Shown in pieces: positions 10,501-13,500 of a stretch of 64,000 nt of DNA. Source of the stretch: Zootoca vivipara (taxonomy: Eukaryota); assembly GCF_963506605.1 (NCBI RefSeq), contig NC_083284.1:61504001-61568000 (forward strand). Reading direction: 5' to 3'. The translations under genes and the position numbers were made by a program. The notes under the pieces were generated by a model. The model saw nothing but the letters and a program-made list of their open reading frames with translations, was not told the origin of the DNA and did no database searches. The number at the start of each line of letters is the position of its first letter. Positions within the stretch are counted from its first letter, which is position 1.

Positions 10501-13500
10501 CACAGGAGTATTTTTGAAGCAACAGAAAGCCTTCAGGTTTGAATTAATTTAAATGTTTCATCCAGAAAAACAACCTTTGTTCTTAATGCAAAGCCTATGT
10601 CCTCCCAACAAGAATTCTCCATTGCATCAGAATCATCTAACATTCTGAAAATATTTCAAAGCGCAAAGTTGTTTCCCTTTAACATTGTTGCTTTTAAAAA
10701 GTCTTATGATACTATTGGTACTTGTCATGAAGGGTTCTCTTGCATGTATGTAACATGTCATCAGGTGGGAATTAATGCTCCACCTAGTGGTTTAAGGTAG
10801 AAATTGCTGCTCCAATTACAAAAACCTGAGACCTTACCATGATGACCTCCGCCAGTTTTTATTATGGTAAGCCAAGACAGTAAGTGCCAAAATCAGAACA
10901 GTGGCACAACAAAACAACAACAACACGTGACGCTCCCTATCCAGGAAACATGAAGGAACACAGAAAATGGACCACCAATCACATGGAGAAAGGCAGCCTA
11001 GAAAAATGGTGAAGCCCTTATGTCAAGCTACATGCATGTAGAGGAACCATTCAAGGGTAAGTACCAGTAGTATCTTTTCCATGTATGTCATGACATGAAG
11101 TGGGACATGCCCTACTTGACCTGTATAGGGTGGCAAACAATTGAGAGAATGAGGGGCTGCCTATTGGTCCAGGAGGACGTGGCTCCCAAAGGCTGCCTCT
11201 GCAAAAGCACAGACATTTGCCTTATAGTGTTTAGTAAAGGTATTGAGACTAACCCAGGGAGCATTCAAGGAAAACGCTGTCCAAACAGATGCTGCTCTGG
11301 ACTTCCGGTCTGCCGCCATCAGCCGCCGGCGGGGTTCGTTTCGGTCTCCGAGACACCCGCCGCTACCGGGGAGGGGGAGAGTCGCGCGGGCGCCGCGACC
11401 TCCCGGAGAATCCCCAGATTGTGCGTTCTGGGGGCCGATACCCAGCAGCGCTCCAAAAAAGCCATGGAAACCGCCCGGAGAGCCCCCGTTGGAGCCTCCG
11501 AGAGCAGGCTGTACATGGCGGAGCCTTGGGTCCATTGCTACCCCGGTAGCGGGAAGCTCCGAGCCGGAGACAGAGGAGCGGCAGATACCTTCAAATCAAG
11601 ATCTGGACTGTGAGTAAGATAATTCAATTTGATTTTAAAAGAAGAATTTGGACTTGGGAGGGGAATAAAAAACGGAGGTCGTTCCCCCCCCTACCCGGAA
11701 GGCTGTGCCACAACTAACTTGCCTGCAGCCGATTGAAGAGAAGGGGCGCGGATCCCCCTGAAAATTGAACTTGTATCCCCCCTTAGAAGGCAGAACTAAG
11801 GGGGGGAATATATATTTTAGACTGCGTTGGTAAATTTGATATCGTGATCAAGAACCCCCCCCCCCCGGAAACCGGGGGCAGGAGCCTAAAGCCGCGACCA
11901 GTTGACAACATAAGGATTTATAAAGAGTAATTTGCTGCGATTCTGTGATTTTTTTTTTTGGATTATATTTTGGACTATCTTTAAGTTGATTGACGTGACA
12001 AAGTGGAGAATTGGAAAATTTGAATTAAGAATTTGAATTATAAATGATAAATATGGTTGGAAACAAACAAAGGAATTAGTTTGGACATTACAGCACCATC
12101 TCTGGCGGATCAGGTTATAATTCCCACGGGAACATAGAAGGACAAAGAAGGCTGCCAGCCAAAACAACCCGCTTACAAATGGAGGAGGTCGAGTTGCAAC
12201 ATATTTTAGACTTTATTAGAGAAATGACAGAGGAAGTACGTTATGGCAAAGTTAACATTCAGACTTTAAAAGAAGACCAACAACAGATATCCCCAACGGA
12301 AATTTTAGAACTGGAAGAAGAAGAAGAAACCATTGAACAACGGACTGAAAATAAGGAGCAATGGATTGAGAAATCAATGCAACCTGTGAGAGAGGAAGCA
12401 TTGACCACCTACGTGACTTTGGATGCTAAGGACCAAGATGGACTCTGGGACCTGGTCTGCCCAGTGAGAGAGGGCGACCAGATCCCAGAAAGAAACAAAG
12501 AAACTGAGGAGGGAGGAAAGAGTCTGGCCATTGCCCCCCCAGTGAGAGTGAGGGGACGCAGACCAGACAGAAGATTGGAAATAGGGGATACTGGAAATAA
12601 AGATGAGGGTGGGAGGCGGGTGGAAGAATTAAAACAACGGAAGGGGAAGAAGGAGGAATGGGGTGGTTTAGAATGGCCAAGAGTGGGTGTGGGGTAAAGA
12701 AGGAATATAAAGTAGATGAATGGATGGATCAAAAGGCTTGAAATTGGACAGTATGAAGACGCTGGCCGGGGAAAAGGGGAAACTGCTACCTGGGGAGGGA
12801 GGGGGTGGGATTTGAGGTTTAGCTATAAGATTGGATAGAATCTGAATCAGGAAATGGTATATCTTTTTAGGGGGAAATTATAGGCTAAAGGAAATTATTA
12901 GAAATAGTTAAAAGCAATGTAGTTTAAAATTTAATAGAAATTGTTGTGTGGGGTAAAAAAAGAAGTTGTGAAATTTGATATGGAATAGACCCGGGAGGGG
13001 AGGGACGGGGAAGTCGGGGACAAGATATTGTTAGAGATATTACTTTTCTTTTTTATCTGTTTTCCTTTTTGTGCTTTTTCTTTTGTTTTTCTTAATTTTT
13101 CTTTTCTACTTTTTAAGCTTTTGTATTTTTGTGTGGTATTTTTTTTATTGCAAAAATTTCAATAAATATAATTATATAAAAAAAAAACAGATGCTGCTCT
13201 AGTCAAATGGGCCATAATTTTGGTTGGAGGAGTCAAATGCAAACAATTATATGCCAAAGTAATACAGGCTTTCAACCATCATTAAAATGGCAGAGGATAC
13301 TGTCTTGCCCAGAAAGACAGGGTGAAATGAAATGAAAAAAGGACTGAGACTGACGGAAAGGCTTGGTACAAGCAACGAAGACCACCAGAGGCAACTCGAG
13401 GAAGAGGAGCAGAGGGGGGCTGGGCAGGAGGAGATGAAGGCTTAGCTAGATCTGCCAGAAAAGCTTCCTTCGACAGGTGAAGAACCCAGAGATCAACCTG

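What the first reader, a model, noticed from the sequence alone, without database searches (positions are those of the whole stretch)
11283..13200. Young 1.9-kb RT-less retroposon with L1-type ends carrying its own protein: a candidate undescribed non-autonomous family
Seen: a perfect 16-bp TSD; a 5' end GGACTTCCGG followed by ~330 bp rich in intact CpGs; an ~880-nt leader; one 172-aa ORF; then a G-rich and T-rich 3' UTR, AATAAA and poly(A). There is no RT or endonuclease, no tRNA/pol III head and no LTR or TIR. Established: TSD plus poly(A) is the signature of L1 target-primed reverse transcription, and HAL1 (half-L1) elements are ORF1-only L1 parasites. Inference: this is a full-length, pol II-type non-autonomous element mobilised in trans by an L1 like the one at 163-4229. 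Unlike typical HAL1, its ORF is about half the ORF1p size with no evident RRM/CTD.
Basis: partly seen in the sequence, partly recalled or inferred. Interest (0 to 1): 0.82.

Follow-up and report, generated by a model that had tools for sequence, protein, structure and literature searches.

The report
Young mobile RT-less lizard retroposon family
This 1.9-kb insert is a real, very recent copy of a multi-copy "hitch-hiker" jumping element in a lizard genome. It has no copying enzyme of its own, carries one short orphan reading frame, and is still absent from this site in another animal of the same species.

Summary
An 1,886-bp poly(A)-ended insert (11299-13184, + strand) lies between perfect 16-bp target-site duplications. 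It has a CpG-rich head, an 880-nt leader, one 172-aa ORF and a purine-rich then T-rich 3' UTR with AATAAA. It has no RT or endonuclease, pol III head, LTR, TIR or VNTR.

Public reads of the same species show:
- word depth jumping exactly at the element's ends, from 14 to 27-258 in one run and from about 2 to 92-297 in another;
- 69 variant contigs at 90-100% identity;
- at least four other upstream flanks joining within 2 nt of the same first base;
- one contig that is the precise empty site with a single copy of the 16-mer.

It is therefore a multi-copy family with a fixed 5' end, and this insertion is polymorphic. A second species holds part of it at about 98%.

The ORF has no credible relative among 1.84 billion representative proteins and no Pfam domain, so it is not HAL1 in the strict sense. 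Variation between copies in the ORF looks neutral.

Not shown: mobilisation by L1 in trans (inferred), an L1 origin, an internal promoter, and any role for the protein.

Repbase and Dfam could not be queried. First readers of this scan flagged at least seven similar RT-less elements elsewhere in this genome (unchecked).

The parts
11283..11298 (.). 5' copy of the 16-bp target-site duplication AAACAGATGCTGCTCT
   Evidence: It occurs only twice in the window. A single copy is present in the empty-site contig of run X9 (joint 11282->13185, 16 letters fit both sides).
11299..13184 (+). Whole retroposon copy, 1,886 bp
   Evidence: The depth step in DNA contigs falls exactly at these ends. Other copies' flanks join at 11299-11301 and leave at about 13183.
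11299..11611 (+). CpG-rich head (candidate internal pol II promoter / 5' exon-like part). It holds an ETS-like ACTTCCGG at 11301-11308 and a YY1-like GCCGCCATC at 11312-11320.
   Evidence: G+C 66%, CpG obs/exp about 1. The RNA fold z-score is -2.7. The promoter role is inferred, not shown.
11612..12178 (+). A/T-richer leader. It begins with a splice-donor-like GTGAGT, has homopolymer runs (C8, G7, C12, T11) and two further uATGs.
   Evidence: Most indels between copies lie here (table 4). The stretch 11642-11690 is shared at 90% or more with a more diverged sister repeat (loose ends on both sides in X3 and X9).
12179..12697 (+). 172-aa orphan ORF: acidic helical N-terminal half, disordered Gly/Arg/Lys-rich tail
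   Evidence: length not expected by chance. Searches find no credible relative or domain; pLDDT 57, helices at 3-21, 27-32, 39-83 and 144-154; 12 substitutions seen in other copies, 3 synonymous and 9 not, with no stops.
12698..13020 (+). Purine-rich (A+G 69%, C 7%) part of the 3' UTR
   Evidence: The L1 3' UTR at 3876-4229 shows the same order of compositional blocks.
13021..13160 (+). T-rich (57% T) part of the 3' UTR with imperfect 10-21-nt tandem units
13161..13184 (+). AATAAA (13161-13166) and a short poly(A) tail (A run 13178-13187, of which the last 3 may belong to the TSD)
13185..13200 (.). 3' copy of the target-site duplication

Best explanation
The insert is a young, full-length copy of a multi-copy, RT-less, polyadenylated retroposon family of a lacertid lizard.

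Proposed mechanism:
- Source copies are transcribed by pol II from a defined start at GGACTTCCGG. The promoter is probably the CpG-rich head carried inside the transcript (inferred).
- The RNA is cleaved and polyadenylated after AATAAA.
- The poly(A) RNA is reverse-transcribed at a nicked target by the ORF2 protein of an active L1 acting in trans. This leaves a short A tail and a 16-bp duplication (inferred from the hallmarks).
- The family carries one 172-aa orphan ORF kept open in the source lineage. The ORF is not an ORF1p homologue. Its role, for example a helical multimerising, basic-tailed RNA-binding helper, is a guess.

This particular insertion is recent enough to be absent from another individual of the same species label.
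For: - Hallmarks: perfect 16-bp TSD, AATAAA and A tail.
- Depth: contig word depth rises from 14 in the flanks to 27-258 inside in X9, and from about 2 to 92-297 in X3, with the steps at 11299 and about 13184. The tool warns this is not a copy number.
- Variants: 69 contigs were laid in X9, 22 at 99%+, 29 at 95-99% and 18 at 90-95% identity.
- Shared 5' end: different upstream sequences abut 11299-11301 in X3, X9 (two) and X21.
- Shared 3' end: a different downstream flank follows 13183 in X3.
- Empty site: an X9 contig of 995 bp at flank depth joins 11282 to 13185 with one copy of the 16-mer, on a haplotype with three nearby SNPs listed in table 3 (11099, 11179, 13295).
- Filled allele: an X3 contig reads 11166-11316 without a difference, though only 18 letters lie inside the element.
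- Subfamilies: diagnostic differences are shared between runs in different combinations.
- Second species: organism B holds 12032-12396 with 1-4 differences per contig.
- ORF length is not expected by chance.
- No RT/EN, ORF1 domain, tRNA, LTR, TIR or VNTR.
- An L1 with RT and EN domains lies in the same window.
- Earlier notes of this scan report young processed retrocopies in this genome, consistent with L1 machinery acting in trans.
Against: - No partner L1 was identified. The only L1 available (163-4229) shares no alignable sequence, only the same 3' UTR block order.
- The target site reads CC/AAAC rather than the canonical TT/AAAA.
- RNA support is thin. Only 37 reads were laid from about 6% of one run, most from other copies, and some run from foreign flanks into the element. 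That indicates read-through, not own initiation.
- The 12 substitutions seen in other copies within the ORF are 3 synonymous and 9 non-synonymous, close to the random expectation of 21% synonymous.
- Four uATGs precede the ORF.
Confidence: 0.8

Rival explanations
1. A swarm of processed pseudogenes from one highly germline-expressed host gene, either an orphan-coding gene or a lncRNA. Every copy would be a dead-on-arrival retrocopy of a single chromosomal source, not a self-propagating family.
For: - The head looks like a housekeeping CpG-island first exon, with an ETS-like site at the start and a YY1-like box.
- The head ends at a consensus-like donor GTGAGT, as a retained intron would.
- ORF variation between copies is neutral.
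- Young retrocopies of host genes are reported in this genome.
Against: - No credible protein relative in either search, although annotated lizard proteomes are presumably, but not verifiably, among the proteins searched.
- No internal loose end in the DNA contigs has a splice-junction form.
- Copies span 90-100% identity with shared diagnostic sites, plus a more diverged sister repeat sharing 11642-11690. This fits long-lived succession of sources.
- First readers flagged several similar 1.2-2.3-kb RT-less elements elsewhere in the genome (unchecked).
Confidence: 0.12
2. The family is mobilised by a LINE clade other than L1 that is active in squamates (L2/CR1, RTE-BovB or R4).
For: Several LINE clades are active in lizards (established knowledge). 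Earlier notes mention chimeric retrocopies with L2 tails. The target site is not canonical for L1.
Against: - The element ends in AATAAA plus a plain A tail and has a 16-bp TSD. It has no L2/CR1 microsatellite tail and no BovB 3' end.
- It has the same 3' architecture and short A tail as the L1 in the window.
Confidence: 0.05
3. A single-copy accident: either a one-off internal deletion of a full L1 or a lone processed pseudogene.
For: Only one copy is present in the 64-kb window.
Against: The depth step, the many variant contigs and several distinct flanks at the same 5' end exclude a single copy.
Confidence: 0.01

Closest known systems
HAL1 (half-L1) elements of mammals
   Same: Both are pol II-type, poly(A)-ended, RT-less, multi-copy elements with one ORF, presumed to use L1 ORF2p in trans. 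HAL1 is described as a non-autonomous L1 derivative encoding only ORF1p, arising several times in mammals (PMC5753468).
   Different: The ORF here has no Transposase_22 / RRM / CTD signal and no detectable ORF1p relative, and is about half the size. L1 ancestry of its UTRs is not shown. The host is a squamate.
SVA and other composite L1-dependent retroposons
   Same: Non-autonomous, pol II transcribed, polyadenylated and TSD-flanked, with insertions still polymorphic. SVA trans-mobilisation by L1 is described in PMC3287187.
   Different: There is no hexamer repeat, Alu-like part, VNTR or retroviral-derived part. It carries an ORF, which SVA does not.
Processed pseudogenes / retrogenes
   Same: Same hallmarks: a full-length transcript copy, an A tail and a TSD. 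These are common and young in this genome according to earlier notes.
   Different: This element is multi-copy with subfamily structure, and no host protein or parent was detected.
L1 elements of lizards (for example the copy at 163-4229)
   Same: A purine-rich sense strand, and a 3' UTR running from a purine-rich block to a T-rich block, then AATAAA-like signal and a short A tail.
   Different: It has no ORF2, no ORF1 domain and no alignable sequence in common with the one L1 at hand.

Membership tests
HAL1 (ORF1-only L1 derivative) | Encodes an L1 ORF1p homologue (coiled coil + RRM + CTD, Pfam Transposase_22) | tested here: not met
   No Pfam hit for the ORF or any sense-frame piece at E up to 1-10. 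phmmer against 1.84 billion representatives gave only one spurious repeat-protein hit. No PDB relative.
HAL1 (ORF1-only L1 derivative) | Lacks ORF2 (EN/RT) | tested here: met
   No RT/EN domain. tblastn of the window's L1 ORF2p against the element gave nothing.
HAL1 (ORF1-only L1 derivative) | 5' and/or 3' UTR derived from an autonomous L1 family | tested here: inconclusive
   Only one 5'-incomplete L1 was available. There is no alignable similarity, only the same order of compositional blocks in the 3' UTR (Smith-Waterman z 7.7 against mononucleotide shuffles, which local composition can explain).
L1-dependent non-autonomous poly(A) retroposon (functional class) | Poly(A) tail after a polyadenylation signal, and a TSD of about 7-20 bp | tested here: met
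   AATAAA at 13161-13166, a 7-10 A tail and a perfect 16-bp TSD.
L1-dependent non-autonomous poly(A) retroposon (functional class) | Many copies at different sites with the same 5' end | tested here: met
   Depth step at the ends, 69 variant contigs in X9, and four or more different flanks abutting 11299-11301.
L1-dependent non-autonomous poly(A) retroposon (functional class) | Precise empty site with one copy of the target | tested here: met
   An X9 contig of 995 bp joins 11282 to 13185 with 16 shared letters.
L1-dependent non-autonomous poly(A) retroposon (functional class) | Insertion at an L1 endonuclease-type site (TT/AAAA) | tested here: inconclusive
   The site reads ...GTCC/AAACAG. 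It is A-rich on the 3' side but lacks TT on the 5' side. One site cannot decide.
L1-dependent non-autonomous poly(A) retroposon (functional class) | Mobilised by L1 ORF2p in trans | not testable with these tools
   Needs a retrotransposition assay or a genome-wide match to a co-active L1 family.
Processed pseudogene of a host gene | An intron-containing parent gene, or a match to a host protein or mRNA | tested here: not met
   No protein relative. No splice-junction-like internal breaks in DNA contigs.
SINE | Pol III head derived from tRNA, 7SL or 5S | tested here: not met
   ARAGORN found none. Rfam gave only sub-threshold chance-level miRNA-like hits in the GC-rich head.
LTR element / DNA transposon / SVA-like composite | LTRs, TIRs or an internal VNTR | tested here: not met
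   The only perfect direct repeat is the TSD. There are no terminal inverted repeats and no VNTR.

The most novel reading that the evidence does not exclude
Lacertid lizards harbour a currently active class of protein-coding, RT-less retroposons whose single orphan protein has a helical acidic half and a basic disordered tail and is unrelated to ORF1p. In this reading the protein is a functional minimal RNP-forming helper that lets the RNA capture L1 ORF2p. That would be an independent, non-mammalian invention of HAL1-like parasitism built on a different protein, with an internal CpG-island-type promoter that keeps copies transcribable.
Probability: 0.2. Interest if true: 0.75.

Novelty: new variant of a known kind. 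Interest (0 to 1): 0.58.

Why it matters
Apart from SINEs and processed pseudogenes, the non-autonomous passengers of L1 known to me come almost entirely from mammals (HAL1, SVA). This is a polymorphic, and so recently and perhaps still mobile, pol II-type passenger in a lizard, with a fixed 5' end and an ORF that is not ORF1.

It offers a natural system for two questions: what an RNA needs in order to hijack L1 ORF2p, and whether a cis-encoded protein other than ORF1p can help.

It is also practical for lacertid work. Such insertions are clean presence/absence markers between lineages, and they put CpG-rich promoter-like heads into genes.

If the family turns out to be already listed in Dfam or Repbase, or to be a plain pseudogene swarm, the value falls to that of a well-documented young insertion.

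Tried and rejected
- Within-window copies: blastn of the element against the window gave only itself.
- Protein identity: Pfam, the word-based search, the ESM Atlas (best 0.79, below any useful level), PDB sequences and the full phmmer scan all left the ORF an orphan. The single phmmer hit, P0001, is a 500-aa internally repetitive protein matched on four repeats and is spurious.
- Single-sequence AlphaFold gave pLDDT 57, too low for a fold search, so none was run.
- L1 derivation: blastn, Smith-Waterman and tblastn against the window's L1 gave nothing alignable.
- mir-484-like hit at 11459-11521 on the minus strand: 28.6 bits against a gathering score of 40, with few matching letters. Rejected as a GC-rich hairpin by chance.
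- The two other ACTTCCGG sites in the window (24492, 41265, minus strand) belong to a different repeat, not to heads of this family.
- Metagenome scan for the first 29 bases: no match.
- The search of earlier findings by sequence was blank twice.
- The bacterial promoter/terminator scan is irrelevant to a vertebrate element and is ignored.
- Literature searches found no description of such a lizard family. The HAL1 origin paper (PMC2923044) is not held.

Full report
**What is in the sequence.** The 16-mer AAACAGATGCTGCTCT occurs exactly twice in the window, at 11283-11298 and 13185-13200. It is the only perfect direct repeat around the insert. Between the two copies lie 1,886 bp (11299-13184), made up as follows.
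- Head, 11299-11611: starts GGACTTCCGG. The first 200 bp are 69.5% G+C with CpG obs/exp 0.99, against 0.29 for the whole window.
- Leader to 12178: begins with a donor-like GTGAGT at 11612. It is richer in A/T, has long homopolymer runs, and brings the number of upstream ATGs to four.
- ORF, 12179-12697: 172 aa, start context ACAAATGG.
- 3' UTR: a purine-rich block with only 7% C, then a block with 57% T.
- 3' end: AATAAA at 13161-13166 and an A run of 10, of which 7-10 are tail.

There is no RT, endonuclease or any Pfam domain in any sense-frame piece. There is no tRNA-like head and no Rfam family at threshold. There is no LTR, TIR or VNTR.

**Is the ORF more than chance?** The region is T-poor, which lengthens random ORFs. 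Even so, none of 2000 shuffles of the local segment, and only 0.05% of shuffles of the whole element, reached an ATG-ORF of 172 codons. It is therefore likely that the frame has been kept open in the lineage that produced this copy.

**Single copy, host retrocopy or family?** The window holds only this copy, so the test had to come from public reads. The run search returned 20 runs holding the stretch or part of it. Sixteen carry one species label (organism A) and hold 30-66% of the sampled words, whatever the size of the run. That pattern fits a repeat whose common form differs from this copy by a percent or two.

Four runs were laid on 10900-13600.
- **X9 (DNA contigs).** Flanks have a word depth of 14. 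The depth inside the element is 27-258, and the step falls at the element's ends. 69 contigs were laid: 22 at 99% or more, 29 at 95-99% and 18 at 90-95%.
- **X3.** Flanks are at about 2 and the inside at 92-297. Its three main contigs cover 11300-13099 and differ from this copy by 22 substitutions, with 6 gaps.
- **Shared 5' end.** Four different upstream sequences abut the element within 2 nt of its first base: one in X3, two in X9 and one in the RNA reads of X21.
- **Shared 3' end.** A different downstream sequence follows 13183 in X3.
- **Subfamilies.** Differences are shared between runs in different combinations. For example, 12311A, 12330T and 12366C occur in X9 and in organism B, while 12511A and 12551T occur in X3 only. 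This is subfamily structure.
- **A diverged sister repeat.** A short stretch (11642-11690) is flanked on both sides by related but much more diverged sequence in both X3 and X9. That points to a more distant sister family sharing the leader.

The tool's own caution applies: summed contig depth is not a copy number. I claim only "many copies, from tens upward".

**The empty site.** One X9 contig of 995 bp, at flank depth 14, runs from 10900 to 11282 and continues at 13185. Sixteen letters fit both sides, so it is the pre-insertion allele with a single copy of the target. It sits on a haplotype with three nearby SNPs listed in table 3 (11099, 11179, 13295). With 31-letter words, such a contig can only arise from reads that span the empty junction. 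In X3, a contig reads 11166-11316 without any difference. It shows the filled junction, though only 18 letters lie inside the element, fewer than the 31 the tool asks for. The insertion is therefore polymorphic among animals with the same species label. This fits its perfect TSD and intact CpGs.

**Other species.** Contigs of organism B (X17) cover 12032-12396 with 1-4 differences each, about 98-99% identity, in leader and ORF alike. The family, or a close relative, is thus not confined to one species. Names are coded, so the evolutionary distance is unknown.

**Which genome?** Earlier notes of this scan call it a lizard, almost certainly Zootoca vivipara, and report young intact retrocopies of CDC7 and PPP6C. 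I did not test this myself. It is consistent with an L1 machinery that acts on poly(A) RNAs in trans.

The same index lists first-reader notes, not followed up, on at least seven other RT-less elements of 1.2-2.3 kb elsewhere in this genome. They are described as having a CpG head, one short or coiled-coil ORF, poly(A) and 16-20-bp TSDs. The ORF of the present element was also noted separately. These notes are leads, not independent evidence. I could not compare sequences, because look-ups by sequence were blank and such blanks mean nothing here.

**The protein.**
- No Pfam family, no hit in the word-based search, nothing useful in the ESM Atlas and no PDB relative.
- In the exhaustive phmmer scan of 1.84 billion representatives there was one hit: a 500-aa internally repetitive protein matched on four repeats, which I regard as spurious.
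- Single-sequence AlphaFold gives low confidence (pLDDT 57), with helices at 3-21, 27-32, 39-83 and 144-154 and the rest disordered.
- The N-terminal 100 residues are strongly acidic, and residues 121-160 are net basic.
- Of 12 substitutions seen in other copies inside the ORF, 3 are synonymous and 9 are not, close to the 21% synonymous expected at random. None is a stop, and no indel was listed there. All 12 listed indels lie outside the ORF, 11 of them in the head or leader and one in the 3' UTR.

That pattern is what neutral decay of dead copies gives. It neither supports nor excludes selection on source copies.

**Relation to L1.** The window's L1 has an ORF2 with endonuclease and RT domains. 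It is defective: the ATG at 163 is followed by an in-frame TGA at 208-210, and the long frame resumes out of register at 207. No part of the element aligns to it.

What the two share is architecture:
- a purine-rich sense strand;
- a 3' UTR that goes from a G/A-rich block to a T-rich block, then an AATAAA-like signal and a tail of only 7-10 A.

The Smith-Waterman z-score of 7.7 was measured against mononucleotide shuffles, so local composition could explain it. I count it as weak. L1 ancestry of the element's ends is open.

The higher depth of the first 600 bp compared with the ORF in X9 suggests the head is shared with further elements, but I could not identify them.

**Expression.** Only 37 read mates were laid, from about 6% of one RNA run. 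Most were at 90-99% identity, so they come from other copies, and 17 fitted only partly. Four reads run from a foreign flank into a diverged copy's first bases, which is read-through rather than own initiation. No reads fell on 11628-12264, although both sides were covered. This coincides with the GTGAGT at 11612, but no joint was seen and the numbers are too small to claim splicing. No start, strand or level can be claimed.

**How it most likely works.**
- Shown: the hallmarks of target-primed reverse transcription of a polyadenylated RNA, a fixed 5' end across copies, many copies with subfamilies, and recent activity.
- Inferred from established L1 biology: L1 ORF2p acts in trans on the poly(A) RNA.
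- Inferred from anatomy only: the CpG-rich head is a promoter downstream of the start. It has an ETS-like ACTTCCGG at +3 to +10 and a YY1-like GCCGCCATC at +14 to +22, so each full-length copy would carry its own promoter. The resemblance to the YY1 box near the start of human L1 is from memory and is only a lead.
- Guess: the protein helps form the RNP.

**Comparison with known kinds.**
- It works like HAL1 or SVA, as an L1 passenger made by pol II.
- It fails the defining HAL1 feature, an ORF1p homologue. The HAL1 definition is in PMC5753468 and the ORF1p type II definition in PMC5203782.
- It has none of the SVA parts.
- It is not a SINE.
- It differs from ordinary processed pseudogenes by copy number, subfamilies and the lack of a detectable parent.

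I rate it a new variant of a known kind. The caveat is that Repbase and Dfam could not be searched, and automated repeat libraries of lacertid genomes may already hold it unnamed. Full-text searches found no description.

**Limits.**
- Only one call each of the run search and read laying was allowed, so copies could not be collected and aligned.

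Noticed in passing
window 163-4229 (+): L1 copy with EN and RT domains. Its ORF2 start (ATG at 163, MDLNIISWNVNGLNN) runs into an in-frame TGA at 208-210, and the long frame resumes out of register at 207, so there is a frameshift near codon 15. Bases 1-162 upstream are non-coding and T/A-rich, so the element may continue beyond the window start.
   Followed up: partly
window 36780-37412 (-): A 211-aa open frame with a strong match to the MOR2-PAG1_C domain (E 3e-29). 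It is probably an exon of a FRY/FRYL-type gene on the minus strand. The retroposon may lie in or just beyond that gene, in antisense orientation.
   Followed up: no
window 24478-24499 and 41251-41272 (-): Two copies of ACTTCCGGGTTTGC(G/C)G... within similar surrounding sequence. This appears to be another interspersed repeat, unrelated to the element studied.
   Followed up: no
window 11642-11690: In both DNA runs, a 49-bp piece of the leader sits in contigs whose neighbouring sequence is related to the leader but far more diverged. This points to a sister family, possibly one of the 2.1-2.3-kb RT-less elements noted elsewhere in the genome.
   Followed up: partly
window 11628-12264: No RNA reads of run X21 fell here, although the head and the ORF/3' UTR were covered. 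The gap starts right after the donor-like GTGAGT at 11612. There are too few reads and no joint was seen, so splicing of the leader is only a possibility.
   Followed up: no
window 11949-11970 vs 13164-13185: The T11 run and following bases of the leader are 82% complementary over 22 nt to the last bases and A tail of the element. This is probably a low-complexity coincidence.
   Followed up: no
window 11459-11521 (-): Sub-threshold Rfam match to mir-484 (28.6 bits, gathering score 40) in the GC-rich head. Judged to be chance.
   Followed up: yes
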